A DNA stretch of 44,350 nt from Octopus sinensis (lineage: Eukaryota): NCBI RefSeq assembly GCF_006345805.1, contig NW_021834912.1, positions 1-44,350 on the forward strand, written 5' to 3'. The notes under the pieces are model-generated. The model worked only from the letters and a program-made list of their open reading frames with translations, ran no database searches and had not been told where the DNA came from. Positions within the stretch are counted from its first letter, which is position 1. Each line of letters opens with the position of its first letter. The translations under genes and the position numbers were made by a program. Positions 8,258 through 42,019 of this stretch are shown here, in pieces.

Positions 8258-8298
<41 letters not shown>

Positions 8299-9274: not shown

Positions 9275-9335
<61 letters not shown>

Positions 9336-9492: not shown

Positions 9493-9495
9493 GAC

Positions 9496-9584
<89 letters not shown>

Positions 9585-12969: not shown

Positions 12970-13006
<37 letters not shown>

Positions 13007-13086
13007 TTTTAATATTTCTTTGTAGTTTGATCGTTGATGATCTATTTCTAGCATGCGGCCAACCACCTAACGGTCGTGCCCTGTCA

Positions 13087-13134
<48 letters not shown>

Positions 13135-13279
13135 CCATCATTCTAACCATACAACATACATATATATATGTTTATATATCAGGGCATTACCATACATAAG
13201 TACCTCACACTATGAGGAACTATTACAGTCAAACTACCATAACAAACACATACGTATATATATATATATATATATATAT

Positions 13280-13760
13280 ATGCTTTCAATTTGACCATAG
13301 ATTCCCTATTTCTCGGTCAGTTTAAACACAAACCAGCTGCACTCTGCTACACCCTCTATAAATTCCCTACTGGGAATCACCAACTTTAAGAGAATCTTAC
13401 ATTGCTTATAAACTCTACATCTGGATGGACTCATATTAAACTCTGTTGGACTTTTGGATTTTACTCAAAGGATACTGGAATATTGCACATATATACCCTG
13501 ATGCCTATAAAACGGATTTACGAATCCAATACCCATACATATCTTACATCTATTTTCTTTCCTCCATCTCACTCGCTATTTGTATCACATCGAAACTATG
13601 ACTTAATTTTTCCTCTCACACCGTCTCTGATGAAGGGATATTATTAATTAATATCCTACAAACAGCTGTAAGACCTTCTATCTATAAATGCTCTAATATC
13701 TATACAGCCTTGGTTTTTTTATCTCATTACGCAAAAAATTCATATATTTAATCGAAGACT
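13280..13760 (+). mobile_element. Degenerate Penelope-like 3' terminal (pLTR-like) fragment
   Basis: Contains a hammerhead-like motif at 13623-13674. The upstream sequence only weakly suggests a decayed endonuclease end. Confidence 0.45.
13623..13674 (+). ncRNA. Minimal type I hammerhead-ribozyme motif, degenerate (G12 to C)
   Basis: GTCT-CTGATGA-A-GGGATATTA-TTAAT-TAATATCCT-A-CAA-ACAGCTGT-A-AGAC. Canonical CUGAUGA, stem I GTCT/AGAC, 9-bp stem II, palindromic stem III ACAGCTGT, GUA cleavage triplet. It has CAAA where GAAA is expected. Confidence 0.7.
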
Positions 13761-14878
13761 GTTTGATTTCCTTATTTTCCTTCTTTTTACCTGTGTGAGT
13801 TACAGGTAAGGTTATCTGTGGAATCATATTTTGTAGCGAAGAAGAAATAACGGTCTTTTGGCTGCTATTTCTAAATTTTCGGTATGTGGTGAAGCAACTT
13901 GTTGCTAAAGCCTTAATTACTGTTATAATTAAATATAAAACTTCTTGTATAAGTTTTTACTGAATATGGTTCTTTTCCATACCGAAACTACTTGGTAAAA
14001 TTTATTAATTATAAATTAATAATTATTTAAACTTATATCTATAAAATATATATATATATATATACATATATGTATATATATATATATTTAATAACGAACC
14101 ACTCTGGAAATTTTATTTTTGTAAAATGTTGGGAGTGGGTAAAATTGCGGACCCAAAAAGGGTTTTCTGGGATATTAGGTGGGTCACAGCATTTCATTCA
14201 ACAAAATAAAAAAAAAAGATTTCCAATGATTCTGGAATGGCGCAGAGGGTCCCCTTCGAACCCTATTCCTAAAGGGATTTGCAGCATATTAGGAGGTCAC
14301 GGTACTTGATTTCATGCAAAAAAATGTGATTTTTTTTCCCTTAGTGAAAATGGTGCTGGTGAAAAGATCACTGAGGATGGGGGTGGGTACAATTTCCGAG
14401 GCTTCCGCCTCACCCCACTCCATTTATCAGACCCCCTAAAAGGGTTTTGTAGCATATTAGGTCACGGGAATTCATCCAACAAAAACCAAAAATAATAATT
14501 TCCAATGATTTGGGAATGGGGTGGGAGTGCGTCCCCGTCGTGGCACCCTTTTCTTCTGAACCATAATAAGTGATTTCCAGCATATTTGGAGGTCAGGGTA
14601 CTTCATTCCATGCAAAAAAAATTCGAGTTTTTTTCTTTCTTGGTGAAAATCGTGCGGGTGTTAATCTGAAAGTTTACCGAGGTACGACACCACCCCTCCC
14701 CACCACTGCTAACAAGATATTGTATATAAAGGGTGCAGTGTAGCAGCGATAACCCGCTAGTGGAGAATCTGCCTTGGGTTAAACTAGTAGTAACCTTCTG
14801 CAGCCACTTTGATGTGCTGACTCACTTTACTTTGTGAGATTTTACAAACTACACACACACACACACACACTATAATGG

Positions 14879-14914
<36 letters not shown>

Positions 14915-15739
14915 GTCTGTCTGTCTGTCTGTCTCTCTATCTATCTGGCTGTCTGTCTCTCGCTCTCCCTCTCTCTCTATTTATTATGTAATGAAAGAAA
15001 GGACATCACCATCATGAAATACAACAATGTCTCTTTCAACACACAACTTCACATGAAGAATCCGGCAAAACAAATGCATAAAAGTATGCTTGTGTCTGTG
15101 TGAATCTTTTATCTTTAACGTGTTTCAGACATTAGACTGTGGCCATGCTGGAGCAACACCTTGAAGAATTTCTAGTCGAAGAATTGAACCCAGTACATCT
15201 TTGTGTTAAGCCTTGTATTTATTCCATCGATCCCTCCATATAGCACCTTCTTTTTCACTCGCTCATCCTCTCTCTCTCTCTCTCTATTTCTAACAAACTG
15301 AGTCACAATGCAAATATTTCCTTCAGGCATTACACAGTATAATGTGTGATTTAAAGGGATTTGACTGCTATTTCTGCAAGAGAAAATATCGATACAACTA
15401 TATTCACAGATATACAAGAAGTGACTCCCAGACCTCAAAAAGAATTATAGTTCCTCATCCATGCCAGAAATTTTAAGGGGACAGGTTAAATCGACATTTA
15501 CCGAAAGGGGTCTAGTCACCAGATACGGGTCCTGCATGGCCTCATTAGACACACATAAGAGAGTACGCTGTAATTAATTGGTAATTCCAACGAGCCTACT
15601 TTCATTGCAGATAATCCCCTCAGATATTACACAGTATGATGTGTGATTTCAGGAGATTTGACTGCTATTTCTAGAAGGAGATGTATTAGTACAACTATAT
15701 TGATATATATTATTGTTGCTATGGTGCGTGTTTGTGTGT

Positions 15740-15776
<37 letters not shown>

Positions 15777-15997
15777 CAGTGGGGAAGCTGGTAGAATCGT
15801 TGCCATGCTGGAGGAAATGCTTAATCGCATTTTGTATAGCTTCATGTTGTGAGTTCAAGTTCTGCCTCAGTCAATTTATCCATTTCATCGTTCCAGGGTC
15901 AATAAATTAAGTACCAGTCAAATACTAAGGATGAAGTCATTGATTAGTTGCCCACAGTAATTGCAGGCCTTGTGCTAATAGTAAAAAGTAAATTAGA

Positions 15998-16045
<48 letters not shown>

Positions 16046-17421
16046 GATAGATCTCTTATAGTATGTGTGTGTGTGTGTGTATAAGCCGATGAGGTGACAG
16101 AATCGTTCACACGCAGTGTCGTTGGAGTCAATTAGTTGCCTCTACTAGAATTCCAGGCCTTGTTTTCTTTAGACAAAGAATGATCACATATGTGTATGGT
16201 AGAAAGCGGAAGTCTCCATGGGTGCCCTGGGACTGAATGTCGATGTGGGTGAAGATTACAAGGAAAATTTCTGCTCCCAAATTCTGAGAAGAAAAGAGAG
16301 TAACAGACAAATGGATAGATGGATGGCTGTGAGATTTGGCTGTTATTTCTTGCAGCAGGTCTACTGTACATTAAGCATTGATACGTTATATATTTAGATC
16401 TTGGTTTTCTGCATCCTTCTCTCGTTTTCTGTGTCCGTCTTTGCATATAATTTTGCTAAGCTCTTGCTGTTGTTTCTAGCATATGAAATGTTGCAGTTTC
16501 ATGGACCTGTTGTATTGGATTTGTGTCGTGTGACAAATAGGTGTACAATTTATAAACTGCAATTAATTTCAGAAGAACAGTAGATTGGAGGGGCATTTAG
16601 CTGCTATTTCAAACAACTCTAGCTATCATGTACACTTCAGCTTTCATCAGCTAATATATAAATATGTATGGAGTTAGAAGAGACGGTATGATGTTGTTTC
16701 AACGTAGATTTGGCTGCTATATCTAGCAGCTCTGGCATTCGTTTGCATTTTACACATGATTAATTTAATTTTCTCATTAAATTAAACTTTAATTTGCATT
16801 TAAGTATTACAGTGAAATTATTACAACAACCAAAACTAGTTACAAACACACAATTACATATGCTAGAAACAGCAGCTATATAGAAGTATTTCATGTTTCT
16901 TTTTACACAGTTTCCTTTCCAAAAACGTGTGTCTACGTAAAGTTTGTGCTTCAGTACAAGAGACTGAGTGAATATGTATAGGGGATGGGGGTCGGTTTTC
17001 TGAAATAAAATCTGTGAGACTGGTGCCCCTAAATCAGCATAAGCAACAAGAGTATGGATGTATTCGGCAGAGGAAGGAATGGAAGCCACATTTAGGAGAA
17101 TATCTTTGCATCGTTTAGGAGTGTGTGAGGGAAGACGACTGGGAACAAACGAATGGATTGATATCTATGTATATACATTTGTACTTATATATTATATATC
17201 TCCCTCCATCTAACTATACAACATGCATTCACATACAGGTGTGGCTGTGTGGTAAGAAGCTTGTTTCCCAACCACACACTCAGGGTTCAGTCCCTGTATG
17301 ACAACTTGGACAAGTGTCTTCTACTACAGCATCTGGCCAACCAAAGTCTTGTGGGTAGAATTTGGCTGGCGGAAAATAAAAGAAGCCCATCGTATATTTA
17401 TACCCATACATACATACTATA

Positions 17422-17505
<84 letters not shown>

Positions 17506-18093
17506 ATATATATATAATATATATATATATACATATATATATACACACACACACACAGAGAGGTGAGCTGGCAGAATTGATAGTGCACCGGACAAAGTAC
17601 GTAGCGGTTTTTCACCTGTCACTATATTCTGAGTTCAAATTTCGTCAGGGTCAACTTTGCCTTTCAACCTTTCAGGGTCAATAAATGAAGTACCAGTGAA
17701 ACATTGGAGTCGATCTTATCAACTCGACACCCCCCCGCAAAACTTTCAGGCCTCGTGCCTATAGTACAATAGATATATATATATATGTGTGAGTGTATAT
17801 ATCTGTGTGTGTGTATATATATATATATATATAATATATATAATATATATATTCATGTGTGTATATCTGAACCCCACCCCACATAACCATCACTTGACAA
17901 CCTATGTTGGTCTGTTTACAACCCTTTAAGTTAGTTTGGCAAAAGGGACTGATAGAATAAGTCCTGGGCTTACGAAGAATAAATCCTGGGGTCGATTTGT
18001 TTGACTAAAACCCTTTAAGGCAGTGCTCCAGCATGGCCGCAGTCAAATAACTGAAACAAGTAAAAGAAACAAAGAATGTAATATATTTAGATG

Positions 18094-18278
18094 CAGGGTT
18101 TCCCATCCAGGGGTGCACACACCGCTTGGGGGTGCGAGCAGGGCTGGATTTATATGGGGTCAAAGTCGGCAATTGCTCCGGGCACCTTTATTCTTATATA
18201 AACTATTACTTTAAGGGGTGTGAGAACATATTAAAGGTTTTTAAGGGTGCAGGGCATAAAAAAGGTTGGGAACCCCTT
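18094..18278. mobile_element. hAT (Charlie-like) MITE, copy in duplicate B
   Basis: TIRs CAGGGTTTCCCATCC ... GGTTGGGAACCCCTT. Confidence 0.65.
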
Positions 18279-19244
18279 TGATAGATAAACAGACAGATGT
18301 GAGATTTGGCTGCTATTTCTAGCAGTAACTCTGGCATCCATTAAGCATTGAAACATTCTATATTTAAATGTCTTTTCTTTCTGTCTCCCTCTCAGTATTT
18401 TCTGTATCCTTCTTCACATATATTTTTGCTCAAGTCTTGCTGTTGTTTCTAGCATAGGAAACGTCTCAGTTTAATGGACCCTTTGTATTTGTCTTGTTTT
18501 GCGTGACAAATAGGTGTAGAATTTATAGACTGAAGTTAATTTCAGAACTACAGCAGATTGGAGGGACATTTGGCTGCTATTTCAAACAAATCTAGCTATC
18601 ATTTTCATTGGCTTCAATTTTTATCGGCTCATATATAAATATGGATGGAGTTACGTGAGGCAGTATGATGCTGTTTCGACGTAGATTTGGCTGCTATTTC
18701 TAGCAGCCCTTGCTTTCATTTACTTCTTATACATCATGAATTTCGTTTTCTTTTCTAAATTAGACTTCATTTTCCATTTAATTATTCCAAAGAAATTAAT
18801 ACAAAACTGGAAAACCATATAAGACAAATAGATAGATAGACAGCTGTGATTCAGTGAGTTTTGACTGCTATTTCTAGCAGCAAGTCTATAAAATAGTTAC
18901 AAATGCACAATTAATACAAGTTGAAGCTAGAAACAACAGTTAAAGGAATGTATCACATATTTTTTTATAAAGTCTCCTTTCCAAAGCTTTGTGCCTAGGT
19001 TTAGTTTGTTGTTTGAGTAGAAGGGACGGAGGGAATATGTTTGGGGTCGATTTTCTGAAATAAAATCCTTGAGACTGGTGCCCCAGAATTGACAGAAACA
19101 ACAAGACGAGTAAAATCGGCAGAGGAAGGAATGGAACCAACATGTTGGAGTATACCTTGGTGTCGTTTAGGAATGTGTGTGGGAAGACAATCGGGAAGAA
19201 ACGAGTCGACACAGGTACCAGTAATGCAAACTGGCATCGGCCAG

Positions 19245-19442
19245 GCTCTGTCATAAGAAGTTTGCTTCCCAACCACATGTTTCCAGGTTCAATCCTACTG
19301 TGTGGCACCTTAGGCAAGTGTCTTTTAAATGACCCTTAAGTCAACCAAAGCCTTGTGAGTGGATCTGCTAGATGGAAACTGAAAGAAGCCCATCATATAT
19401 GTATGTATGTATATCTATATGTATGTATATATATACATATAC

Positions 19443-19475
<33 letters not shown>

Positions 19476-19680
19476 CATATTCATTTGTATGTGTCTACCC
19501 TACACCACACATCCCCATCGTATGACAACCGATGTTGGTCTGTTTATGTCCCTGTGACTTTGATTTGACAAAAGAGACTGATAGAATAAGTACTAAACTT
19601 ACAAAGATTTGTTTGACAGAAACCCAGGAAGGTGGTGCTCCAGCAGGGCCACAGTGAAATAACTGAAACAAATAAAAGAA
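19245..19680 (+). mobile_element. SINE family A (duplicate of 7800-8240)
   Basis: Near-identical to the copy in duplicate A. Confidence 0.8.
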
Positions 19681-20575
19681 TAAAAAATAAATAAATGTAC
19701 AAGAATAAAAGAATGTATATATATATATATATATTTATATAAATAGAGAGACAAACAGACAGACAGACAAATAGATAGATAGACAGCTGTGATTCAATCT
19801 TTTGGCTGCTATTTCTAGCAAGTACATTTAACATTGATACATTATATATTTCGATCTTTTTTTGTTTTTGCTTTCCTCCCAGTTTTTTCTCTGTCCGTCT
19901 TTGTATATATTTTTGCTAAACACTTGCTGTTGTTCTAGCATATGAAATGACACAGTTTAATGGACCTGTTGTATTGGATTTGTTTTGCATGACAAACAGG
20001 CAGCGTAGAATTTAAACTGTACCAAATTTCAGAAGTACAGAGGATTGGAGGGGCATTTGGCTGCTATTTCAAGCAACTCTAGCTATATAACTATGTATGG
20101 AGTTACGTGAGACAATATGGGGGGCTTTCTCTCTGTAAATTTGGCTGCTATTACTAGCAGCTCTTGCATTCAGTTGCATTTATATATCATGCTTTAATTA
20201 TATTTTTAATTAGGCATTAATTTGCATTTAATTATTAAAATGAAATTAATACAACAACAAAAAACTAGTTACAGACACAAACTTAAATACAAAGTTTGCT
20301 AGAAACAACAGTTATATGAATGCATTGCATATTTTCTCACAAAGGGTCCCTTCCCAAAATATACGTCTAGATTTGGTTTGTGCTTCAGTACAAGAGACTA
20401 ACTGAATACGTATGGGGTGGATTTATAAAGTAAAATCTGTGAGACTGATGCCCCCAAATCAACATAACGAGGCTACGAATATAATCGGCAGAGAAGGAAT
20501 GGAACCCGCATGTCAGAGTATATCTTGTCATAGTTTACGAATGTATTTGGGAAGATGACTGGGAGATACGAATGG

Positions 20576-20606
<31 letters not shown>

Positions 20607-20733
20607 CATCATTCTAGCTATACAACATATATTTACATATATATATGTTTATATATCAGGGTACCATACATAAATGCTTCACACTACGAGGGACTATTAA
20701 GTCAAACTACCATAATAAATACATTATATGTGC

Positions 20734-20770
<37 letters not shown>

Positions 20771-21027
20771 CACATGTTGTGTGCTCCACAAATGTATAGG
20801 CACAGGTGTTCCTGTGTGGTAAGAAGTTTGCTTTCCAACCACAGGGTTCTGTGTTCAGTCCTACTGCATGGCACCTAGGGCAATTTTCTTCTATTTTGAC
20901 CTCGGGCCTTGTAAGTGGACCTTGTCAGATGGAAACTGAAGTGAGCCCATATATGTATATATATACATATATATATATATGTATATATATAGATAGATAG
21001 ATACATAGATAAATATATGTATATATA

Positions 21028-21410
21028 GTGGCTGTGGTAAGTAGCTTGCTAACCAGCCACATGGTTCCGTGTTCAGTCCCACTGCGTGGCATCTTGGGCA
21101 AGTGTCTTCTGCTATAGCCCCGGGCCGACCAATGCCTTGTGAGTGGATTTGGTAGACGGAAACTGAAAGAAGCCTGTCGTATATATGTATATATATATAT
21201 GTGTGTATGAGTTTGTGTGTCTGTGTGTCCCCCAACATCGTCTGACAACCGATGCTGGTGTGTTTACGTCCCTGTCACTTAGCAGTTTGGCAACAGAGAC
21301 CGATAGAATAAGTACTGGGTTTGCAAAAGAATAAGTCCCGGGGTCGATTTGCTCGGCTAAAGGCGGTGCTCCAGCATGGCCGCAGTCAAATGACTGAAAC
21401 AAGTAAAAGA
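21028..21410 (+). mobile_element. SINE family A, apparently full length
   Basis: GTGGCTGTGGTAAG...GTTCAGTCCCACTGCGTGGCATCTTGGGCAAGTG, a central microsatellite, and the tail GGCGGTGCTCCAGCATGGCCGCAGTCAAATGACTGAAACAAGTAAAAGA. Confidence 0.85.
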
Positions 21411-32639: not shown

Positions 32640-34008
32640 TCATCATCATGATAATTTAATGTCCTCTTTCCATGCTAGCATGGGTTGGACAATTTGACTG
32701 AAGGCTGGTGAACCAGATGGTTGCACCAGGCTTCAATCTTGATCTGGCAGAGTTTCTACAGCTGGATGCTTTTCCTAACGCCAACCACTCTGAGAGTGTA
32801 GTGGGTGCTTTTACGTGTCACCGGCACGGGGCCAGTCACGCGATACTGGTAATGACCTTGCTCAAATCTTTTACACGTGCCAGTAACGCAATGCTGGTAA
32901 TTATCAAGCTCGAATGGCGACTTTTATGTGCCACCGGCATGGAAGCCGGTTAGCCACTCTGTCAACGATCACACTCGTATGGTGCTCTTTGCTCCCCGCT
33001 AGCACAGATGCCAGTCATCGGATTTGATTTGATTTCACTTGCATCAACAGGTCTTCGCAAGCAGAGTTTTAGTGTCCAAAGAAGGAAGAGGAACGCATAA
33101 GTGAGCTGGTTACGTCCCTGGCATAGGCCACGAGGTTATGTTCTCATGTGGCTTGCCGAGTCTTCTCATGCACGGCATATTTCCAAAAGTGTCTGTCACT
33201 AATCATTTCCTTGGTGAGGCCTAAAGTTCGAAGGTCATGCTTCACCACTTCATCCCAGGTTTTCCTGGGTCTACCTCTTCCACAGGTTCCCTCAACTGCT
33301 AGGGTGTGGCACTTTTGCACACAACTATCTTCAGCCATTCTCGTCACATGACCATACCAGCGCAGACGTCTCTCTTGCACACCACAACTGATGCTTCTTA
33401 GGTCCAATATTTCTCTCAAGGTACTTACACTCTGTCGAGTATGCACACTGACATTACATATCCATCAGATCATACTGGTTTCATTCCTTGCGAGCTTACG
33501 CATGTCCTCAGCAGTCACAGCCCATGTTTCACTGCCAAATAGCATGGCTGTTTGTACACATGCGTCATACAGTCTACCTTTTACTCTGAGTGAGTGGCCC
33601 TTTGTCACCAGCAGAGGTAAGAGCTCTCTGAACTTTGCCCAAGCTACTCTTATTCTAGCAGCTACACTTTCAGCGCACCCTCCCCCACTACTGACTTGGT
33701 CACCTAGGTAATAGAAGCTATCAACTACTTCTAGTTTCTTCCTGGAATGTGGCGAAAGTTGTTCTCTGTGCATTTTCAGTGTTTATTGCACCCGAGAATC
33801 TGCCACATGCAAAAGCTATCTTCCCAGTTAGCCTTCCTTTGATATTGCTGCACCTCTTATGTATCCATAGCTTACACTGGGTACATCTTAGAGTTTCTAC
33901 CCAAACCTCAACTACAGATCGGGCAGGGCCATCTACCTGAAAGAATTTGTGGTTTGCTTGCCTTCCCACTTATTAGGACTTTGGTTTTAGCTAGGTTGAC
34001 TCTAAGGC

Positions 34009-34056: not shown

Positions 34057-35849
34057 TATTTAGCAGAAGTAACAAAGTGACCCAAAATCCAAAAGTTTCG
34101 TTTATTAGCATTTATCAAACTGGTTCTTTGGAGGTATATTCCCAGACCTCCAAACACCACTTTGATGAGTGTCAACTCTTGGACCTTGAGTCCCAACTGT
34201 CATGCCCCTATCACCCCTACCTCTATCTTTCATCTCTCAATCACTCTCTCTTCTTCTTTTTACTCTACTATCTTACTACTGTGACAAAGATTGGCAGTAA
34301 ATCTCTTCTCTTCACCATTCTTCCAATGAAACTAGGGATGTTACTGGACCTACCTGAGTCTCTCCCCAACACTCAGCCACTCCTTTTCATATATTTATTA
34401 CCCTAGATCTCTCACACATCCCAGGGTATATGTCACACCAGAGATTGAGGGGAACGTTTAGTTTGTCAAGGACATGGCGATTGTCTCTAGCGATGGTACC
34501 ATAAGATGCACCCAGTGCACATTGTGCGCAAGGTGGTTGTGTCAGGAAGAGCATCCAGCTGCAGAAAGAAAACCAGAAATGTAACTTCAGGCAAGATATT
34601 CTCTGAACCATCCAACCCATTCCAGCTGGAAAGTGGGGGGTAAAATGATGATCATCATATACATACATACTGGATGTATTATACATATGTGCATCCTTGT
34701 GTATATTATTACACATTCATTCTATCATATATATATATGTATGATCCTGAAGAAGGTTCTCTTTTATTTTATTTCATTCCTGGGGTCATAGAGTAAAGTC
34801 ATTATTTCATAGACCAAGGAGGCGGTGGAGGATCATGATGATGATGGGTCACCAGAATATCATTAACAACACACCCACCAATATTCCTAATCCACCTCAT
34901 TAACCCCTAATACTTCATAAACTACAAAAATAACTCCTACACTAACCACACAACAAAACACACTTCACCTGCCAAACCCCTTTTCATACAAAACACATCT
35001 TTCTCATTTCTACTACCCAAACATTGTCCCTTATATTAAAGATAATTAAGATGAACCTACCTTCATTAATTTGGGCTTATTCATTAACCAATCTTTATGA
35101 TCTCAATCAGCAAACAAATAAATAAACAGATCCTCATATCAACATGCTGTCTATCAGTTGATTATATGAAGCCATCTTTGGATAAGCTTTCCGAGTTAAT
35201 CAAATTGTGTATGATAATTGTGTGGATGTATTGAAATGTCGAGAGATTTACCGCATTTGTCAGGTTTAGAACAGTTTCATCTCCAGCTTATTCATATCTG
35301 TTAATCCAGGTAAATATGATGGAAACCAAGCCAACCATGATGTCCCATCATTAGTAATACTTGTACCTGACAAATGTCTATGAAACATAATAAAGTCTTG
35401 TTTTGCTAATTGTTCCATGTTAACGAAGTAGTTGAACATGATTGCTGTGTTGGGACATAATATAGCATGTACACCAATTAAAGTTAATTTTCTCTACAGC
35501 TTAGAGTGTCTCGTTATTGAGTGCTTTTGGAGCAGGGGAATCTCTTTGACTAATTATCGTTAAATAAATCTAAACCACACATGACTATTTCTTTGTGATG
35601 TTGAGAGCAAATATCATTTCCAGTGAAAATAATTATTCTAATATTTAGACTCCATGTAATTAATGAAACTTAATACATCTTAGAATAGATTGTAATAAGT
35701 TGTTTAAATATTATTAGACAAGATTAATTCATGACAGAAATACATAAATGTTTGTTTGTGTTTTTCAAATGATGAAGCAAACATCATCTCCTGAAACTTC
35801 AATATTTTCAAAAGCTAAATGTTTTCCTTATATTCTTTACAGATTCACT

Positions 35850-37679
35850 ATGGAAGACCAGACTGAAAATACTTTAAGGAAACTATCCCTCAGAAATTGG
35901 CTTTGAGTTACTCAACACCAAAAGGGATGAGAAGGAGTTGACCATCAAAGGTGTAAATATGTGGAGAGACGACGGTTCAGGGAGAGAAATGTCCGAGAAA
36001 CGAGCTTCATCTCAGCCAAACAAAACATAAAAGACATAAAGGAGACCCTAAAAACTGGGAAATAATGGGAAGACGAAATATTTTTGACAAACACATATTT
36101 TATACAAGATTCAATGCCTATGAGGCACAAATTGATTTGTTGATAAATTCTCGGAAAGAAATATGTACTTTTTAAAAAGAATAGGAATGGATGAAAATAC
36201 TTTTCTAAAACATTTTACAAGAGAATAGAAATTCTGACGAGACAAGACATTAAAAAAAAACGATTACAATCAAGAATTTATAATTTTGGAAAACTAGAAT
36301 TGTTCCTGGAACAAACTATATACAAAGAAATATTCTACAAGACAAACACAAAACATTGAAGCACCAAAAATAATCACAAAATTTCGGCCCTCTTCAGCCA
36401 GTTGTGACTAGAGAAGCAAACATTGAGGATCTGGAGAAGAATTGAAGAAGAAATCCCAATAATATCCAATATTGTCATCATAGAGGAGGGAGTGTGACAT
36501 ATAGACTTGATGACATATTCCCACAATTGCAAGATAATAAGTTTAGTAACAAGAGACAGTGACAGAATTGATGTCCATTGTCCATCTTCTGTGACCAGTT
36601 TCACAAGAATCAGTGAAGACATGGTTCTGGCAACCCTCCCCTTCCATGAAATGATTCTTATTATCAGCCCCAAAACCTTCAAGATCAAAAGGATACAGTT
36701 GTGGGTTACATATGGTGAGTTACTTGGAAGATTCTACACTTATAGGTGTAGAAATGTTTGGTAAGATAGTTTACCATTTGATTGGGAGGAGGATAATACC
36801 ATTAACTATCATTTATTACCAAAGAAGAAACCCCTACAGATATTGCTGTAGGGGTCCAGAATATACTTGTAATTACATTCGCCAGCATCAACAGAGTAAT
36901 CTGTTACAAACTGGATGGCCAACAGTTATGGGAGGTAGAGACCCATTCTCTGCACCTCCCAAGTAAAATCTCTCTCTACCAAAATATTTCTATGTCCTCC
37001 AGGGACAAATAATTTATAGGATTTCAGCTAATGGTGTGTGACAAGGAGGGACATTGGCAGGAAATGCCGCTCTATTTCTGTTGGTAAAGATACCATTTTG
37101 GTAACAGATTATTGCGGCAAACCACATGGTATTCAAATGATAAAGAATCCCAAGAGTTTGCCCAACCTGTCATACAACAACCAGCTACATACCCCCAGTT
37201 TAAAAGACTATATTGATATTGAGGATTGCTACAACATTACAAATATTCTACCTATGTCTACATCTTCTATATTTAATTTACAAAACAAGAAAGCTAAATT
37301 ATTCACTGATAACGGGGAAATAATTAACCAAAATAATTCAGTTTTCCTTGAGCTTCCTTCTTTCTTGTGTAGAATAAACGCAAACAGATTCCTGGTATTT
37401 TATCCTGAAATGAAAGGTTTCAGTATATCACCTGTCCTGAACTAAGAAAAGGCCCTTTAATAAAGGTGCAAACTGGTTACATGAAAATATGTATATTGTA
37501 TCAAATAAGTGTCTAGCTGTGACCACCACTGAAAACAAAAGCGAGGTCCATATCCTCTTGATCAACGAAGATAAAGTTGACATTGACATGCAGAAAGAAT
37601 TTCTCTGGGACATCATAATGTCAGCATTACTGCAACTCCAATTATTTTGTAGTGTAGATGGAAACGAAACGAAAATAAA
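35850..37679 (+). pseudogene. Frameshifted 5' extension of the multi-propeller gene (possible coiled-coil N-terminus plus about two propeller modules)
   Basis: An acceptor-like TTCTTTACAG (35833-35842) precedes an ATG at 35850. Fragments in all three frames resemble the downstream ORF: SSVTSFTRISEDMVLATLP, PTDIAVGVQNILVITFASINRVICYKLDGQQLW, SISVGKDTILVTDY, LPSFLCRINANRFLVFYP and KCLAVTTTENKSEVHIL. Confidence 0.7.
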
Positions 37680-40600
37680 ATGGTATTTTATTCCACATGT
37701 GGTGAAGAACTTTTTCAAAATTACCTTCCATTCTATGGCTACCCTCATCACATCTACTCTGATAATGTTTATTTCTATGTCCTCTTCAGGAGACACTCTA
37801 TTCTCAGATGTTATGATCTATATGGACAAATGAAATGGCAGTGGGAACTGCCTTTCCCTGTTCACCCTCACATTGCTGTTTTCCAAGGAACTCTTTATGT
37901 CCCGGACGCTCAACTCAACAGGGTTCTTCTTTACAAGTATCAAGACCGGTCGTCTGGCGGTCTTTTACCCATTAAAAATCCTTACATCAGAAATCTAAAT
38001 CTACGACTCAAAGAAAAGGAGAATGACCAAAAACTTGTAATTGGCGAAATATGTAATCTGTCCAATGGACAGTTGGTGGTTTCTGACATCAACCATGATT
38101 GCTTGTTGTATATTTCTGAGGAAGGAGACATTGTGTCCAGATTATCTCTGCCGTCTACAGCCACAGATATATGTCGATGGGATTCTAATCATATAGGGGT
38201 CACATTACCCCTACAGAAACAATTAAGGGTCATCGGAAACCTATCAAAGAGAGTGAGAAGTGTATCATTTAGGCAGCCTTATGTACGGGTGTGTAAGATG
38301 GGTGAATGTGAAATTGTTTGTTATTGTGATAAACCATCACATTTAGATATTTTAGCCATCAATTATTATAATCAAGTTGAAGGAATTAAGACAATTAATA
38401 TCCCTGTGTTTGTAAAATCATTATCAATAGACAAGAAAACAGAAAAGCTATTAATTGTTACTAGGGGAAAAGCTTTTCAGTACAACACTAGAATAGGTGG
38501 TGGTGGTCGTGGAGGTCGTCAGATGGTTCCCAGTGTTTTAATGTCCCAAGTGAAACGTCCCCTCAGTCTCCAAGGTGGATCTATTGACCAAACGTCTGTT
38601 TATCTGATAGACAGAAGCCGTATGTTTGCCATAAACGATCAGAATTTGTTGGTTAATGATCTCGTTACTAATAATCAACTTAATTATTATATCGACCTGG
38701 TGGATGTATTTTCCAGACACATTTCTCTCAGTGAAATGTTGTCTTCCACTTTATATCTACAGGACCTGACAGTTTCTGATAAAGCCAGACATATTCCTCT
38801 CCCTAAACATTTGGGAGACAAAGAACCAGCGTGGATTAATCGTTTGGTTCTTACTGAAAATAATCTGATTGCAGGATGGGACGGGGGGAATAGAAACATT
38901 AAGATATTCACATTGGATGGTCACCTTATGGATTCAATCAAAGTGAATGTTTATAGAGATATTAAAATGTGTCGATGGCAGTCAAACACACTGGTCATTA
39001 CGAATTGGGATTATTTTGATGATAATAAACACCAACTGTTGACATTAAAAGTGGAATTTCCATTGTCGTTGGTAATTTACAAAACGAGAAATAAATATAA
39101 ATGTGTGGCTTCTTTATCAAACAATCAATTGGTTTTGAGTGAAAGTGGAGATGTAAGACGTTTGCATTTTGTTGATATTGATGAAATACATTCGAATGTG
39201 AAGGAAATAAAAAAAATAGACATACCTGAACCATTAATAAGGAGAAGAGAAGATGGAGATTATTCTGATATAATCCGGGATATTAAAGTTACTGATGAAG
39301 ATGTCATCATTGTCTTAAACTGGAGATTCATCATTTTCTTCAACAGTGGTGGTCAATATTTACATTCAGTCAGACACTACATGGAGGATTATGTTGGTGT
39401 TGACACGATGACAATCGATGACAGTTTTTTGTACATTTATGGTTATTGGGAGAAATATTTAGGTTCAACTGGATATAAAAACATTTTGTGTTTGACCCAG
39501 AATGGGGAATACAAGAGAATATTTTTAAATAAAAGGATTTATAAAGATGAAGTAGAATTCTCCAGTATAGACTGTAAAGGACCAAGGTTTGTTGGAAGCC
39601 CCAGGATGGGAAGGAGAGAGAATGAATTGTATGTTGAAGGGTTGTTTATGGTGAATCGAGACAGCTTCCCGGTTGCTCGTTTACAAACAGACGAATGTCC
39701 TGTTCAAGTAAAAGATTTTGATGTCTCTGAGGAAGGAAAGACAGTTGTGTGTGAAAAAGCCAATAATGGAAATGTTAAAATATTCGATGAAGACGGCCAG
39801 TTGCTATGTCACAGAAATGTTGCAAGTTTAGTTGGTGGTGTGTGTTTTACACAAGAATCACACATAATGGCCACGGTTCCTAAAAGGAAAGAAATATTTC
39901 AACTGAATGGAGAAGATTTGCAGACATCTCAAGTTTGGTCGAGTCTCATCCCTTATGGTGTAATATGGAGAAAAGTGGCGGGTATTTACTGGTGTGTACA
40001 TAATGAATTGATTGAATGTCATTGCATAAAGATTGATGGGGACCAAGTGAACATTCTGGAATCTGTGTCGTCATTAAATCTTGATTCTGGTCTTCGTTTC
40101 CCTTCCATTACATCTGAAACGAACAAGGAAATATTCAGTAATGAATTAATTAATAAATTGGAATACAGAGGAGGAGATGGAGATGGAGGAGGAAGAAGAA
40201 GAGGTAAATCAGGTGAAATAATTGGTAAAGGTAGATTAAAGGTGAGATGTGGTAATTACATAGCGGAGATTAATAATTCAGGAATTGATGAAATATCAGT
40301 GAGGAGACTTCCATATAGGACAGCAATGGTCCCTTTTTCCATTCCTGCATTCGAGGAACCTGTTGATTATGATTTGAGGGACATTAGGGACCGGAACAGT
40401 AAACTAATTAAGTTAGATGAGAATGTGAGTGTGTTGATGTTTCGAGAAAGTGTCACATTAATCAGAACAACAACAACAACAACAGTGGACATACTTCAAC
40501 ATGAACAACAACAACGACCACCACTGGACATATGTCGGTGGACAGAGGAATGTTTCATTGTCGCCTTTGGGAGAGAAATGAGGGTCTTCAACAGGGATCT

Positions 40601-41339
40601 CCGTCGTTTAAAAACCATCAGAACTGAGAAATACTACAACAGGATTTATAAATACAACGACAATCAACTCGTGTGTGGTGGTCATTATATTAGAGACATA
40701 ACTCAAGAAGAGAGACACAAGAAATACAAAAGAATATGGAGAAACAACAAGTATTACTATTATTGCAAAGACCCTGACATCTTTGACCCTTATTATGTGG
40801 ATGTGGTTGATTTTGAAGATGGGAAATGTAAAGATGAAGTGTGTCGTGGGAAGATGGGGAGATATGGAAGGTTTGAGGGAGATGAAGGGGTGGATGATGT
40901 GGGAGTCACATCTTTTGGTGATGTTGTTGTTGTGAGGTGGGAGATGAAGGAGGAGCAGTGGTCTGGATCGGGGGATATTTTGTGTTTTGTGGAATGGTTC
41001 AGGGAAAAGTCTTTGGTGAGGAGGATAAGAATAGAAGGAGGAAGGTTTTATGTTCTGGAAGAATATATTCCAAGACCTCGTCTGACCATAATTGGTGAAT
41101 GTGTTTATATAACAGATACAAGAAACAATATTTACGAAATACCTCGACATATTGAAGAGGAAACATCTGAAGATGATGAAATCCTGGGATTAAAAGATAA
41201 TCCAAAATATTTACTCCTCAGACGGGATGATAATGAAGTCTCTGAAGTTCTTGGTTTGGATGTTTCAGACAATTCTTTGATGGTTTTTGGAATTATTCCT
41301 GGACCTCAATCTTTTGCTTTCTTTTATTTTGACAAATAA
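37680..41339 (+). CDS. Intronless 1219-codon ORF: tandem NHL-like/six-bladed beta-propeller protein (TRIM-NHL-related, uncharacterised)
   Basis: A very long ORF in repeat-free DNA. It has NHL-like blades (PHIAVFQGTLYVPDAQLNRVLLY, ICNLSNGQLVVSDINHDCL, FDVSEEGKTVVCE..NGNVKIFDEDGQLL) and a recurring module landmark (DICRW, KMCRW, GGVCF, DICRW). No RING, B-box or signal peptide is visible. Confidence 0.8.
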   Translation: MVFYSTCGEELFQNYLPFYGYPHHIYSDNVYFYVLFRRHSILRCYDLYGQMKWQWELPFPVHPHIAVFQGTLYVPDAQLNRVLLYKYQDRSSGGLLPIKNPYIRNLNLRLKEKENDQKLVIGEICNLSNGQLVVSDINHDCLLYISEEGDIVSRLSLPSTATDICRWDSNHIGVTLPLQKQLRVIGNLSKRVRSVSFRQPYVRVCKMGECEIVCYCDKPSHLDILAINYYNQVEGIKTINIPVFVKSLSIDKKTEKLLIVTRGKAFQYNTRIGGGGRGGRQMVPSVLMSQVKRPLSLQGGSIDQTSVYLIDRSRMFAINDQNLLVNDLVTNNQLNYYIDLVDVFSRHISLSEMLSSTLYLQDLTVSDKARHIPLPKHLGDKEPAWINRLVLTENNLIAGWDGGNRNIKIFTLDGHLMDSIKVNVYRDIKMCRWQSNTLVITNWDYFDDNKHQLLTLKVEFPLSLVIYKTRNKYKCVASLSNNQLVLSESGDVRRLHFVDIDEIHSNVKEIKKIDIPEPLIRRREDGDYSDIIRDIKVTDEDVIIVLNWRFIIFFNSGGQYLHSVRHYMEDYVGVDTMTIDDSFLYIYGYWEKYLGSTGYKNILCLTQNGEYKRIFLNKRIYKDEVEFSSIDCKGPRFVGSPRMGRRENELYVEGLFMVNRDSFPVARLQTDECPVQVKDFDVSEEGKTVVCEKANNGNVKIFDEDGQLLCHRNVASLVGGVCFTQESHIMATVPKRKEIFQLNGEDLQTSQVWSSLIPYGVIWRKVAGIYWCVHNELIECHCIKIDGDQVNILESVSSLNLDSGLRFPSITSETNKEIFSNELINKLEYRGGDGDGGGRRRGKSGEIIGKGRLKVRCGNYIAEINNSGIDEISVRRLPYRTAMVPFSIPAFEEPVDYDLRDIRDRNSKLIKLDENVSVLMFRESVTLIRTTTTTTVDILQHEQQQRPPLDICRWTEECFIVAFGREMRVFNRDLRRLKTIRTEKYYNRIYKYNDNQLVCGGHYIRDITQEERHKKYKRIWRNNKYYYYCKDPDIFDPYYVDVVDFEDGKCKDEVCRGKMGRYGRFEGDEGVDDVGVTSFGDVVVVRWEMKEEQWSGSGDILCFVEWFREKSLVRRIRIEGGRFYVLEEYIPRPRLTIIGECVYITDTRNNIYEIPRHIEEETSEDDEILGLKDNPKYLLLRRDDNEVSEVLGLDVSDNSLMVFGIIPGPQSFAFFYFDK

Positions 41340-41401
41340 ATATTTCCAGAAATATTAAACTTCAATCTTCTTCTTCTTATTATTGTTGTTGTTGTTGTAA
41401 A

Positions 41402-41456: not shown

Positions 41457-41718
41457 ACTTATTGTTGTAACATTCCTCAACACTCTCTCTTTGTGTGTGT
41501 GTGTATATTTATGTACAGTATATGTACATGTGTTTATATATATATACACACATATTTAGGAATGTATGTATAGAAATAAGGCTATAAGTATGTATGTTTG
41601 TGTGTGTATATGTGTATGTGTATATATATATATATATATACGCATGCATGTATGTATAGGAATGTCTGGTCCGAAAGCAGAGACTTTCATAATCATTGAT
41701 CCTCCATTAAAAGGCAGA

Positions 41719-41769
41719 CGACAACCGCCGCCGCCTCCACCATCATCATCATCATCGTCGCCATCATCG

Positions 41770-41815
<46 letters not shown>

Positions 41816-41842
41816 TATCATCATCATCATCGTCGTCATCAG
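41719..41842 (+). repeat. (CCG)n/(TCA)n trinucleotide repeat
   Basis: Directly visible. Confidence 0.95.
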
Positions 41843-42019
41843 CGTTGTGTGTGCGTGTGTGCAGTCTGCATCTGACAGTTTTTAACGTTTAATAAGAATA
41901 GATTGTTGTTGTTGTTGTTGTTGCAGTGACATTCCAACTGCACACACGCACAAACATTGCCTTTCGTCCTCGTAGGGTTGTTGTTGTTGTTGTTGTTGTT
42001 GGGGGTTCATAAAAAAAGA

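What the first reader, a model, noticed from the sequence alone, without database searches (positions are those of the whole stretch)
35850..41339. Intronless gene for a giant protein of about six tandem NHL-like beta-propellers
Seen: an equivalent landmark recurs every ~690-870 bp, near 36600 (TSFTRISEDMVLATLP), 37370 (SFLCRINANRFLVFYP), 38170 (TDICRWDSNHIGVTLP), 38970 (IKMCRWQSNTLVIT), 39840 (GGVCFTQESHIMATVP) and 40530 (LDICRWTEECFIVAF). That is ~230-290 aa per module, the size of one six-bladed propeller. The modules are highly diverged, so the duplications are old. Known: molluscs expand TRIM/B-box proteins with a single C-terminal NHL-like propeller, and NHL domains bind RNA or protein. 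Inference: a ~1800-aa multi-propeller array without visible RING or B-box is an unusual architecture. It could be a lineage-specific multivalent recognition (immune or RNA-binding) protein. This is the best candidate for an undescribed system here.
Basis: partly seen in the sequence, partly recalled or inferred. Interest (0 to 1): 0.8.

Follow-up and report, generated by a model that had tools for sequence, protein, structure and literature searches.

The report
Octopus giant six-propeller NHL protein gene
This is one copy of an uncharacterised, octopus-only, heavily duplicated gene family encoding ~1,800-residue proteins built from six NHL-type beta-propellers in a row, two of which change amino acids faster than silent sites on one face, as binding surfaces in an arms race do.

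Summary
All six landmarks are at the stated places, in one frame, 690-873 bp apart. The 1,219-codon ORF 37680-41339 is real. The modules match each other in register (profile E down to 6e-8).

- AlphaFold models of the ORF are almost all beta.
- Module 4 alone folds confidently (pLDDT 86) into 24 strands, i.e. six blades. Its best PDB matches are the NHL domains of TRIM2, Brat, Thin and Mei-P26 (TM 0.63-0.71).
- A search of 1.84 billion proteins found the family only in octopods (three Octopus species and Argonauta).
- The nearest outside relative is a cuttlefish RING/B-box/NHL protein. No RING or B-box is present here.

New points:
- The gene is one of dozens of paralogues, mostly on one small O. 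vulgaris chromosome.
- Among four young copies, modules 4 and 6 have dN/dS about 2-3.5 and the other modules about 0.5.
- In module 4 the variable residues sit on one propeller face (p = 3e-8).
- The 5' third of the window copy carries 25 private frame-breaking indels. This is either an assembly-error patch or decay.

The function, a diversified intracellular recognition scaffold, is inferred and not shown. Transcription was not tested.

The parts
35850..41339 (+). Whole coding region of this family copy. It is a single coding exon of about 1,810 codons once the 5' indels are allowed for. The ATG is at 35850 (MEDQTENT...) and the stop at 41337-41339.
   Evidence: The region aligns end to end with three O. 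vulgaris paralogues at about 94-96% identity. One of them, in L008, is an intact 1,831-codon ORF with the same MEDQTENT start. Intact relatives P0001, P0027 and P0031 are single uninterrupted ORFs.
35824..35842 (+). Splice-acceptor-like tract (ttccttatattctttacag) ending 7 nt before the ATG. It suggests a non-coding upstream exon.
   Evidence: Read directly from the sequence. The tract is conserved in the L002 paralogue. RefSeq lists X1/X2 isoforms for relatives. The splice site itself is inferred.
34744..37700 (.). Indel-dense patch private to this copy. It holds 55 private indels: 27 upstream of the ATG and 28 in coding sequence, of which 25 break the frame. The last is at 37666.
   Evidence: Four-way alignment with L002, L007 and L008. 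Each of those copies has only 1-3 private indels over the same span. The indel contexts are listed.
35850..36427 (+). N-terminal non-propeller region of about 190 aa. It is of the L008/P0021 type and not the P0001 type, and is frame-disrupted here.
   Evidence: It has no Pfam domain and no match to any module or to the RING/B-box/coiled-coil part of the cuttlefish relative. This stretch does not align to the L001 gene but does align to L002, L007 and L008.
36428..37214 (+). Module M1 (landmark at 36594-36641). Frame-disrupted here.
   Evidence: Matches M2 and M3 in register at E about 5e-4. One M1 blade gives a weak hit to the Thin NHL domain. Its profile scores only 5.4 bits against the cuttlefish NHL region, against a decoy maximum of 4.3. 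This is the weakest module.
37215..38012 (+). Module M2 (landmark at 37359-37406). Its 5' part is frame-disrupted. The long ORF begins inside it at 37680.
   Evidence: M2-M4 match in register over 161 columns at E = 3e-4. The M2 profile scores 11.2 bits against the cuttlefish NHL region, against a decoy maximum of 4.3.
37680..41339 (+). Intact 1,219-codon open frame covering the tail of M2 and M3-M6.
   Evidence: ORF list. This copy has no frame-breaking indel against three paralogues over 3.6 kb.
38013..38810 (+). Module M3 (landmark at 38163-38210). It is conserved, with dN/dS about 0.5-0.6.
   Evidence: M3-M6 match at E = 6e-8. The M3 profile scores 27.2 bits against the cuttlefish NHL region. 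The model is all-beta but of low confidence.
38811..39683 (+). Module M4 (landmark at 38961-39002). It is a six-bladed NHL-type propeller and hypervariable among young paralogues (dN/dS 1.5-3.6).
   Evidence: AlphaFold2 model of 38772-39659: pLDDT 86, pTM 0.87, 24 strands. Foldseek top hits are the TRIM2, Brat, Thin, TRIM3 and Mei-P26 NHL domains at TM 0.63-0.71. The M4 profile scores 45.5 bits against the cuttlefish NHL region. Variable residues lie in the B-C and D-A loops (47 of 93) against 4 of 50 in the A-B and C-D loops.
39684..40355 (+). Module M5 (landmark at 39834-39881). It is conserved (dN/dS 0.3-0.55) and shorter than the others. About 16 strands flank a disordered Gly/Arg-rich insert (YRGGDGDGGGRRRGKSG).
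   Evidence: Model strands and pLDDT. M4-M5 match at E = 1.5e-6. The M5 profile scores 22.6 bits against the cuttlefish NHL region.
40356..41336 (+). Module M6 (landmark at 40524-40568). The model shows about 24 strands with long variable loops. It is hypervariable among young paralogues (dN/dS 1.9-3.3).
   Evidence: Model pLDDT is 75-94 over most of the module. M4-M6 match at E = 1.3e-7. The M6 profile scores 27.1 bits against the cuttlefish NHL region.

Best explanation
WHAT IT IS (shown). Window 35850-41339 (+) is one paralogue of an octopod-restricted gene family.
- Each gene has a single coding exon.
- Each protein is about 1,700-1,900 aa: a poorly conserved, domain-less N-terminal stretch of about 175-190 aa, then six tandem modules of 230-320 aa.
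- The modules derive from the NHL six-bladed beta-propeller of TRIM-type (RING/B-box/NHL) proteins. The RING, B-box and coiled coil are gone.
- No N-terminal signal-like hydrophobic stretch is apparent by eye, so the protein is probably intracellular.
- The family has amplified by segmental duplication, chiefly on one small O. vulgaris chromosome. Older dispersed members are conserved across Octopus species.

HOW IT MOST LIKELY WORKS (inferred). The array is a multivalent recognition scaffold.
- Four propellers (M1, M2, M3, M5) are kept under purifying selection. They presumably hold the architecture or bind constant partners.
- Two propellers (M4, M6) are driven to diversify between gene copies.
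- In M4 the changes lie in the loops of one face. That is the face NHL and other propellers normally use to bind ligand.
- Together with birth-and-death turnover of copies, this is the pattern of germline-encoded receptors or restriction factors that track fast-evolving targets such as pathogens, selfish elements or other conflict partners.

THE WINDOW COPY (shown, cause uncertain). Its 3' 1,219 codons are intact and about 98% identical to the intact P0001 gene. Its 5' third carries 25 private frame-breaking indels. I judge these more likely (about 65%) to be a poorly polished patch or mis-join of a nanopore assembly than real decay.
For: Family and its limits:
- 68 homologues, all from Octopus vulgaris, O. 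sinensis, O. bimaculoides or Argonauta hians, and all unnamed.
- An exhaustive profile search of 1.84e9 representative proteins gave only 32 hits.
- Outside octopods these were a cuttlefish protein (E = 8e-8), a unionid mussel NHL protein (E = 9e-4) and three bacterial WD40 proteins (E about 1e-4).
- The cuttlefish hit has RING, B-box and NHL by Pfam.

Repeat structure:
- Modules match in register.
- M2-M6 profiles each hit the cuttlefish NHL region at 11-45 bits. The decoy maximum is about 4-6, with one decoy at 12.

Fold:
- Searches show a multi-propeller fold.
- Searches show M4 as six blades with TRIM-NHL domains as top hits (E = 4e-9, TM 0.63-0.71).
- A PDB sequence-profile search was sub-threshold, but Brat, TRIM71, TRIM2, TRIM3 and Thin make up most of the list.

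Absent domains: no RING, B-box or any other Pfam domain.

Single coding exon.

Segmental duplication:
- Flanks align at about 93%.
- Copies sit at 5.7, 7.2, 9.6, 10.2, 10.4 and 22.8 Mb of OX597841.1.
- One member has 90%-identical orthologues in three Octopus species.

Selection:
- Old pairs have dN/dS 0.45-0.59.
- Young copies have M4 at 1.5-3.6 and M6 at 1.9-3.3, against 0.3-0.6 for M1, M2, M3 and M5. Three methods agree.
- dN/dS > 1 holds in two independent pairs (p = 0.026 and 2.4e-4). The contrast with the other modules gives Fisher p from 4e-3 to 9e-5.
- dS is similar in all modules, so differences in age or misalignment do not explain the result.
- One-face clustering in M4 has p = 3e-8.
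- Between the four young copies, all in-frame indels in the ORF except one in a Gly/Arg linker fall in M4 or M6.

Window copy. The related O. vulgaris assembly is nanopore R9.4.1 reads assembled with NextDenovo and polished with Hypo (PMC10700109).
Against: - No expression data could be examined.
- No member has an experimentally known function, partner or location.
- Pfam NHL is not reached by the window protein. The best family member scores 18.5 bits against a cutoff of 20.
- Only M4 has a high-confidence model. M3 and the M2 tail are below pLDDT 50. M5 shows about four blades. M1 evidence is marginal. 'Six six-bladed propellers' is therefore not established module by module.
- The blade and loop labels in M4 come from a predicted model. 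In M6 the same test gave enrichment in the other pair of loops, and the strand register there is uncertain.
- dN/dS rests on four closely related paralogues, two of them with a frameshift, in an assembly with suspected errors. Gene conversion is evident: a 600-bp stretch is 100% identical to L001.
- Module net charges are near neutral to acidic. This neither supports nor excludes RNA binding.
- An immune role is argued only by analogy.
Confidence: 0.6

Rival explanations
1. The window copy is a genuinely dead, chimeric paralogue. Its 5' third (L008-type) has decayed. Its 3' two thirds (P0001-type) stays open only because it was recently copied or converted from a live neighbour. On this reading nothing is made from this locus, or at most an N-terminally truncated protein from the ATG at 37680.
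For: - There are 26 stops and 25 private frame-breaking indels in 35850-37679.
- Some insertions are small tandem duplications, which look like real slippage events.
- The copy is a mosaic. It is about 72% identical to L001 before about 37165 and 93-100% after, while it is about 95% identical to L002, L007 and L008 throughout.
- Many annotated relatives are truncated or split, and L002 and L007 each carry a frameshift.
Against: - The 55 private indels come with only about 2% extra substitutions. The sister copies have 1-3 private indels over the same 3 kb.
- Elsewhere in the window, non-coding duplicates show about one indel per 110-165 bp at 95% identity. That is two to three times sparser.
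- The patch covers non-coding and coding sequence alike. It runs about 500 bp past the mosaic junction and stops abruptly at 37666.
- Most one-base deletions sit in runs of two or more identical bases. This is typical of nanopore error, and the related assembly is nanopore-based.
Confidence: 0.3
2. The family encodes RNA-binding post-transcriptional regulators, like Brat, LIN-41 and Mei-P26. Six propellers plus Gly/Arg-rich inserts would bind mRNAs multivalently. The variable propellers would retarget each paralogue to a different RNA motif, host or viral.
For: - The closest structures are RNA-binding TRIM-NHL domains, including RNA-bound Brat and TRIM71 entries.
- The Brat NHL domain contacts hunchback mRNA directly (PMC4015489, listed).
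- A family-conserved RGG-like insert lies in M5, and a Gly/Arg linker lies after M3.
Against: - Modules M4-M6 have net charge -2 to -8. The known RNA-binding NHL faces are electropositive (my knowledge, not tested here).
- TRIM2, TRIM3 and Thin NHL domains score as well as the RNA binders, so the fold match does not discriminate.
- No surface analysis was possible, because model coordinates cannot be inspected.
Confidence: 0.15
3. The family is a structural or housekeeping scaffold with no recognition role. The high dN/dS in M4 and M6 would reflect relaxed constraint, sequencing error and gene conversion in redundant copies.
For: - Many copies are broken.
- The assembly quality is doubtful in this cluster.
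- dN/dS in older comparisons is below 1 everywhere.
Against: - Relaxation or random error gives dN/dS near 1. It does not give 2-3.5 significantly above 1 in independent pairs.
- dS does not differ between modules.
- The neighbouring modules of the same genes stay at about 0.5.
- The variable residues cluster on one face of M4.
Confidence: 0.1
4. The ORF belongs to a mobile element, as a cargo or structural gene of a large transposon or an endogenous virus. That would explain the single exon, the many copies and the decay.
For: - The coding sequence has no intron, and there are dozens of copies of which many are degraded.
- Retroelement fragments lie in the window.
Against: - Homology between copies extends through at least 10 kb of ordinary repeat-rich flank in the same order. 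This is the mark of segmental duplication.
- The copies are clustered on one chromosome and not dispersed.
- No transposase, integrase, RT or capsid domain is part of the unit. DUF4371 and zinc-finger hits occur only in fused gene models.
- One member has stable orthologues on the largest chromosome of three species.
- The domain is descended from a host TRIM-NHL propeller.
Confidence: 0.04

Closest known systems
TRIM-NHL (RBCC-NHL) proteins: TRIM2, TRIM3, TRIM32, TRIM71/LIN-41, Drosophila Brat, Mei-P26 and Thin, C. elegans NHL-2, and the expanded molluscan RING/B-box/NHL proteins such as cuttlefish CAE1315789.1
   Same: The repeating unit is the same domain, a roughly 280-aa six-bladed NHL propeller.
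- M4 superposes on these domains at TM 0.63-0.71, and they are the top Foldseek hits.
- They dominate the weak PDB sequence hits.
- The cuttlefish RBCC-NHL protein is the nearest non-octopod relative by profile (E = 8e-8). Module profiles M2-M6 all hit it above decoys.
   Different: There is no RING, B-box or coiled coil, so no E3-ligase module. There are six propellers in tandem instead of one C-terminal propeller. Pfam's NHL threshold is not reached. Two propellers are under diversifying selection. The family is restricted to octopods and massively duplicated.
Multi-propeller scaffolds: DDB1/CPSF160/SF3B3 (three propellers), LRP2/megalin and LRP family (YWTD propellers), IFT-A subunits. From memory, EML5 and EML6 have six WD40-type propellers.
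   Same: Several beta-propellers lie on one chain. These proteins are the top Foldseek hits for the 1,199-aa model (E about 1e-16). They suggest a role as a platform that presents several binding faces.
   Different: Global TM is only 0.10-0.18. The blades are of WD40 or YWTD type and mostly in sevens. In the LRPs, EGF domains separate the propellers. No sequence relationship was detected. None is known as a lineage-specific family of dozens of copies.
Rapidly evolving germline-encoded recognition families (TRIM5alpha B30.2 variable loops, NLR LRRs, lamprey VLRs, sea-urchin and bivalve expanded receptor families). This is an analogy from general knowledge.
   Same: Tandem amplification with frequent pseudogenes. 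Conserved scaffold modules next to modules with dN/dS > 1. Variable residues and in-frame indels concentrated in surface loops of the binding face.
   Different: The fold is different, and in TRIM5 the domain is different too. No immune expression, ligand or signalling domain is known here. The resemblance is in the evolutionary pattern only.

Membership tests
NHL-repeat six-bladed beta-propeller (Pfam PF01436 type) | Closed propeller of six blades, each a four-stranded antiparallel sheet, about 40-45 aa per blade | tested here: met
   M4 (window 38772-39659) gives pLDDT 86, pTM 0.87 and 24 strands. It matches solved NHL domains over the whole domain at TM 0.63-0.71. M6 shows about 24 strands at good pLDDT. 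M5 shows about 16 strands. M3 is of low confidence. M1 and M2 were not modelled.
NHL-repeat six-bladed beta-propeller (Pfam PF01436 type) | Sequence match to the curated NHL repeat model at its gathering score | tested here: not met
   The window ORF and four full-length relatives give no NHL hit. The best family member, P0071, reaches 18.5 bits against a cutoff of 20.
NHL-repeat six-bladed beta-propeller (Pfam PF01436 type) | Demonstrable homology to bona fide NHL domains | tested here: met
   The family profile hits cuttlefish P0088 (E = 8e-8) and mussel P0092 (E = 9e-4). Both pass Pfam NHL, at 29.1 and 32.9 bits. Module profiles score 45.5 (M4), 27.2 (M3), 27.1 (M6), 22.6 (M5) and 11.2 (M2) bits on the NHL region of P0088, against shuffled decoys that mostly score 6 or less. 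M1 is marginal at 5.4 bits.
TRIM / RBCC-NHL proteins | N-terminal RING finger | tested here: not met
   No RING model hits the window ORF or full-length relatives. The N-terminal sequence has no Cys/His pattern.
TRIM / RBCC-NHL proteins | B-box zinc finger(s) and coiled coil | tested here: not met
   There is no B-box hit. The family N-terminal profile scores -2.1 bits on the cuttlefish RBCC-NHL protein. Coiled-coil propensity was not predicted separately.
TRIM / RBCC-NHL proteins | One C-terminal NHL propeller | tested here: not met
   There are six tandem modules.
DDB1/CPSF160-type triple propeller scaffolds | Three seven-bladed WD40-like propellers with the characteristic interleaved arrangement | tested here: not met
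   Foldseek E is about 1e-16, but TM is only 0.12-0.18 at 8-10% identity. The well-modelled module has six blades and is NHL-like.
LDL-receptor class B (YWTD) propeller arrays | YWTD propellers separated by EGF modules, in a secreted or membrane protein | tested here: not met
   No Ldl_recept_b or EGF Pfam hit. No signal peptide is evident in the N-termini (by eye). For single-domain M4 the top matches are NHL and not YWTD.
Expressed, functional gene (as opposed to pseudogene), for the window copy itself | Uninterrupted reading frame from the family start codon | tested here: not met
   There are 26 stops and 25 private frame-breaking indels between 35850 and 37679. Whether they are real is unresolved.
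Expressed, functional gene (as opposed to pseudogene), for the window copy itself | Transcript or peptide evidence | not testable with these tools
   No RNA-seq or proteome tool is available. No transcriptome-derived members appeared in the cluster look-ups.

The most novel reading that the evidence does not exclude
Octopods carry a previously unrecognised, germline-diversified repertoire of intracellular receptors built on a new architecture. Six NHL propellers lie on one chain. Four are constant, and two (M4 and M6) have a hypervariable ligand face. Dozens of clustered copies would each recognise a different fast-evolving target, such as viruses, transposons or other conflict partners. This would be an NHL-based counterpart of TRIM5, NLR or VLR-type recognition in an animal group whose immune recognition is poorly understood.
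Probability: 0.3. Interest if true: 0.85.

Novelty: new variant of a known kind. Interest (0 to 1): 0.68.

Why it matters
Cephalopods have no adaptive immunity, and little is known about how they recognise pathogens or selfish elements. Their lineage-specific gene expansions are usually discussed in terms of protocadherins, zinc fingers and GPCRs.

This is a large, unannotated, octopod-only family with a domain architecture not described for NHL proteins. It also has a sharp internal split between conserved propellers and positively selected ones. That split gives concrete, testable handles: which propellers bind, on which face, and which residues to swap.

The finding also shows how a TRIM-type substrate-binding domain can be freed from its ligase and multiplied into an array.

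On the practical side, gene models in this cluster of the O. vulgaris assembly are often split, fused or frameshifted. Family counts and any expression analysis need paralogue-aware, error-corrected sequence.

Tried and rejected
- Pfam scans of the window ORF and five relatives gave no domain above threshold. They gave only faint propeller-family hints: DUF4934, ANAPC4_WD40 and Mcl1_mid.
- A second word-indexed profile search with 18 full-length members added no new taxa.
- The first exhaustive profile job failed because full-length rows made the profile exceed 1,200 positions. I rebuilt it with C-terminal rows and substrings.
- An exact look-up of the window ORF product found no annotated gene, so the source record of the window was not identified.
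- Literature searches for the locus names, for octopus, NHL or propeller expansions, and for multi-NHL architectures found nothing relevant. The O. vulgaris repeat paper does not mention the family.
- tblastn across the frameshifted 5' part was uninformative because alignments ran through stops. I replaced it with DNA alignments to paralogues.
- P0016 and P0006 turned out to be gene models fusing separate copies or neighbouring genes. I used only their DNA.
- A first, over-verbose hmmsearch run was repeated in compact form.
- The loop-face test on M6 was ambiguous because the strand register is uncertain.
- I considered a transposon origin and rejected it (see rivals).
- I considered WD40 or YWTD identity for the modules and rejected it for M4.
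- Other long ORFs in the window have no Pfam hit. Two look like retroelement remnants.

Full report
**1. The observation**

The window is octopus nuclear DNA: AT-rich, full of microsatellites and retroelement debris. An ORF of 1,219 codons runs from 37680 to 41339 on the + strand.

They share one reading frame, which is also the frame of an ATG at 35850 (MEDQTENT...) and of the long ORF.

I aligned 19 full-length relatives and cut the alignment 50 residues upstream of each landmark into modules M1-M6. Profile-profile comparison then aligns the modules to each other in register:

| Pair | E-value |
|---|---|
| M3-M6 | 6e-8 |
| M4-M6 | 1.3e-7 |
| M4-M5 | 1.5e-6 |
| M3-M4 | 1.6e-5 |
| M2-M4, M1-M2, M1-M3 | 3-5e-4 |

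The N-terminal 174 residues match no module. The repeat is therefore real and old.

**2. A gene family, not a lone gene**

The ORF has 68 homologues. All are from Octopus vulgaris, O. sinensis, O. bimaculoides or Argonauta hians. All are named 'uncharacterized' or 'hypothetical'. Full length is typically 1,700-1,900 aa, and almost none has a precomputed Pfam domain.

- The genes of P0001 (O. vulgaris), P0027 (O. bimaculoides) and P0031 (O. sinensis) are each one uninterrupted ORF of 5.35-5.41 kb.
- In the window, a polypyrimidine-CAG tract ends 7 nt before the ATG. 'Single coding exon with a probable 5'-UTR intron' is therefore more accurate than 'intronless'.
- The window copy and its flanks align at about 93% to other copies, in the same order of flanking repeats. 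This is segmental duplication.
- Copies were located at 5.7, 7.2, 9.6, 10.2, 10.4 and 22.8 Mb of the 29-Mb chromosome OX597841.1.
- Some 35 or more 90%-identity clusters map to that chromosome.
- Other members lie on other chromosomes. One (P0071) has 90%-identical orthologues in three Octopus species.
- Many annotated models are truncated, split or fused with neighbours.

**3. Fold**

AlphaFold2 on window 37740-41336 (1,199 aa, 37-row alignment) gives an almost purely beta model. pLDDT is 70-94 over M4, most of M5 and M6, and below 50 over the M2 tail and M3. Foldseek against the PDB returns multi-propeller proteins first: DDB1, LRP2/megalin and IFT-A. E is about 1e-16, but global TM is only 0.1-0.18.

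M4 modelled alone (window 38772-39659) gives pLDDT 86, pTM 0.87 and 24 strands, which is six four-stranded blades. Its top Foldseek hits are the NHL domains of TRIM2, Brat, Thin, TRIM3, Mei-P26, NHL-2 and LIN-41 (E from 4e-9, TM 0.63-0.71). WD40 domains rank lower, with TM about 0.5.

M6 shows about 24 strands. M5 shows about 16 strands around a disordered Gly/Arg-rich insert. The blade number is therefore established only for M4 and is approximate for M6.

**4. Ancestry**

- Pfam finds nothing above threshold in the window protein or in four full-length relatives.
- A PDB sequence-profile search is sub-threshold, yet Brat (E = 0.046), TRIM71, TRIM2, TRIM3 and Thin make up most of the list.
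- The exhaustive profile search of 1.84 billion representatives found only 32 proteins at E <= 1e-3.
- Apart from octopod sequences, these were a 656-aa protein of the cuttlefish Acanthosepion pharaonis (E = 8e-8), a 468-aa protein of the mussel Sinanodonta woodiana (E = 9e-4) and three bacterial WD40 proteins at E about 1e-4.
- The cuttlefish protein is RING + B-box + NHL by Pfam. The mussel protein has NHL. One distant octopus member reaches 18.5 bits on NHL against a cutoff of 20.
- Separate profiles of M2, M3, M4, M5 and M6 each hit the NHL region of the cuttlefish protein at 11, 27, 45, 23 and 27 bits. 200 shuffled decoys mostly score 6 or less. M1 is marginal at 5.4 bits. The N-terminal profile does not match its RING/B-box/coiled-coil part.

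The modules are thus descendants of a TRIM-type NHL propeller, multiplied six-fold and detached from the ligase module.

**5. Selection**

Between old paralogues or orthologues, dN/dS is 0.45-0.59 overall. It is lowest in M1 (0.25-0.32) and highest in M6 and the N-terminus.

Four young copies (window, L002, L007, L008) differ at silent sites by only 2-6%. Among them the modules split sharply:

| Region | dN/dS |
|---|---|
| N-terminus | 0.6-0.8 |
| M1 | 0.4-0.56 |
| M2 | 0.3-0.57 |
| M3 | 0.5-0.6 |
| M4 | 1.5-3.6 |
| M5 | 0.3-0.55 |
| M6 | 1.9-3.3 |

- NG86, LWL85 and YN00 agree.
- dS is similar across modules.
- In two independent pairs, M4+M6 exceed neutrality (p = 0.026 and 2.4e-4). They differ from the other modules at Fisher p from 4e-3 to 9e-5.
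- On the confident M4 model, residues that vary among the four copies make up 47 of 93 positions in the B-C and D-A loops. They make up 4 of 50 in the A-B and C-D loops and 32 of 148 in strands (p = 3e-8).
- The two loop classes alternate between the two faces of a propeller. Variability therefore sits on one face whatever the exact strand labels. With the NHL motif register used here, it is the face that NHL domains use for ligand. That last point is established knowledge for Brat and LIN-41, not tested here.
- In M6 the variation sits in long insertion loops. The face assignment there is uncertain.
- Apart from one in a Gly/Arg linker, in-frame indels between young copies fall in M4 and M6.

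**6. The window copy itself**

Relative to the intact P0001 gene, the window is 98-100% identical over much of 37760-40750. It is only about 72% identical in 36275-37165 and unalignable before 36340. Relative to L002, L007 and L008 it is about 95% identical throughout. It is therefore a mosaic of two paralogue types.

In 34744-37700 the window has 55 indels that none of the three sister copies shares.
- 27 lie upstream of the ATG.
- 28 lie in coding sequence, and 25 of these break the frame. The last is at 37666.

Each sister copy has 1-3 private indels there. After 37700 the window has only two private indels, both in frame.

Several features argue for a technical origin:
- The patch has roughly one indel per two substitutions.
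- It ignores the coding boundary and the mosaic junction.
- It is rich in one-base deletions in short homopolymers.
- Non-coding duplicates elsewhere in the window are two to three times sparser in indels.
- The O. vulgaris reference that holds the paralogues was built from nanopore R9.4.1 reads with NextDenovo and polished with Hypo (PMC10700109).

I therefore favour an unpolished patch or a mis-join (about 65%) over real decay (about 35%). I could not show that the window comes from that assembly. Some insertions look like true slippage.

Either way, an intact protein of the same type exists in L008 as a 1,831-codon open frame.

**7. Mechanism**

Shown:
- the architecture
- the ancestry
- the restriction to octopods
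- the amplification
- the conserved-versus-diversifying split
- the one-face clustering in M4

Inferred: the protein is intracellular, because no signal peptide is evident. It acts as a multivalent recognition platform in which M4 and M6 carry paralogue-specific binding faces and the other propellers provide constant contacts.

An arms-race target (pathogen, transposon or reproductive conflict) is the most economical reading of dN/dS > 1 together with birth-and-death turnover. RNA binding remains possible, given the RNA-binding relatives and the RGG-like inserts. It is not favoured by the neutral-to-acidic module charges.

**8. Novelty**

The domain is known. New in the sense of undescribed are:
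- the six-propeller NHL array without RING, B-box or coiled coil
- its confinement to octopods
- its copy number
- its module-specific positive selection

No paper in the searchable library mentions these loci or such an architecture. I rate it a new variant of a known kind, of above-average interest. The caveats are that expression and function are untested and that the sequence quality of the cluster is doubtful.

Noticed in passing
window 2127-9567 and 12071-21028: A direct segmental duplication of about 7.4-9 kb at 94-96% identity lies inside the window, upstream of the gene. It carries no copy of the propeller gene.
   Followed up: partly
window 265-1111 and 33023-33867 (inverted): An inverted repeat pair at 87.6% identity, 32 kb apart. 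The left arm holds ORF 259-987, whose product (…FRYLGD…RLRWYGHV…GRGRPRKTW…) looks like the C-terminal part of a non-LTR retrotransposon reverse transcriptase. Pfam gave no hit.
   Followed up: partly
window 10996-12201 (+): A 401-codon ORF with a YVDD reverse-transcriptase-like motif and a Cys-rich tail, running into a microsatellite. It is probably a retroelement remnant. There is no Pfam hit.
   Followed up: partly
window 39854-40453: A 600-bp stretch is 100% identical to the P0001 gene (L001), inside a region that is otherwise 92-99% identical. This suggests very recent gene conversion between paralogues, or assembly mixing of two copies.
   Followed up: partly
window about 38500-38530 (after M3) and about 40070-40130 (inside M5): Gly/Arg-rich low-complexity inserts (GGGGRGGRQ; YRGGDGDGGGRRRGKSGEIIGKGR). 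The model predicts them disordered. The M5 insert is conserved across the family and resembles an RGG box. The M3 linker carries a 45-bp length difference from L002.
   Followed up: no
window 41741-41841: A (CAT)n microsatellite lies 400 bp downstream of the stop and gives a spurious poly-Ser ORF (41566-41892). An AATAAA overlaps the stop codon at 41335-41340, and the next is at 42141.
   Followed up: no
L002 3001-24590, L008 3001-45511, L005 2517-7915: Gene models in the O. vulgaris annotation of this cluster are unreliable. P0016 joins parts of two copies over 21.6 kb. P0006 fuses a copy to C2H2 zinc-finger exons over 42 kb. P0003 and a 465-aa neighbour are one gene split by a frameshift. 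L002 has a one-base frameshift in an A7/A8 run.
   Followed up: partly
L004 1-18460 (-): The O. sinensis family member P0031 lies inside the span of a large gene on the opposite strand (1,956-aa product), i.e. it is nested in another gene's intron.
   Followed up: no
family-wide (P0001 type versus P0021, P0031 and L008 type): Two unrelated N-terminal sequence types of about 150 aa precede the same propeller array. The window has the L008 type joined to a P0001-like 3' part. The N-terminus may be an exchangeable effector or localisation module.
   Followed up: partly
chromosome level (OX597841.1 29 Mb; CM046629.1 12 Mb; CM016888.1 15 Mb): In all three Octopus assemblies, most young copies sit on one of the smallest chromosomes. 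The single well-conserved member (P0071 group) sits on the largest (192-216 Mb).
   Followed up: no
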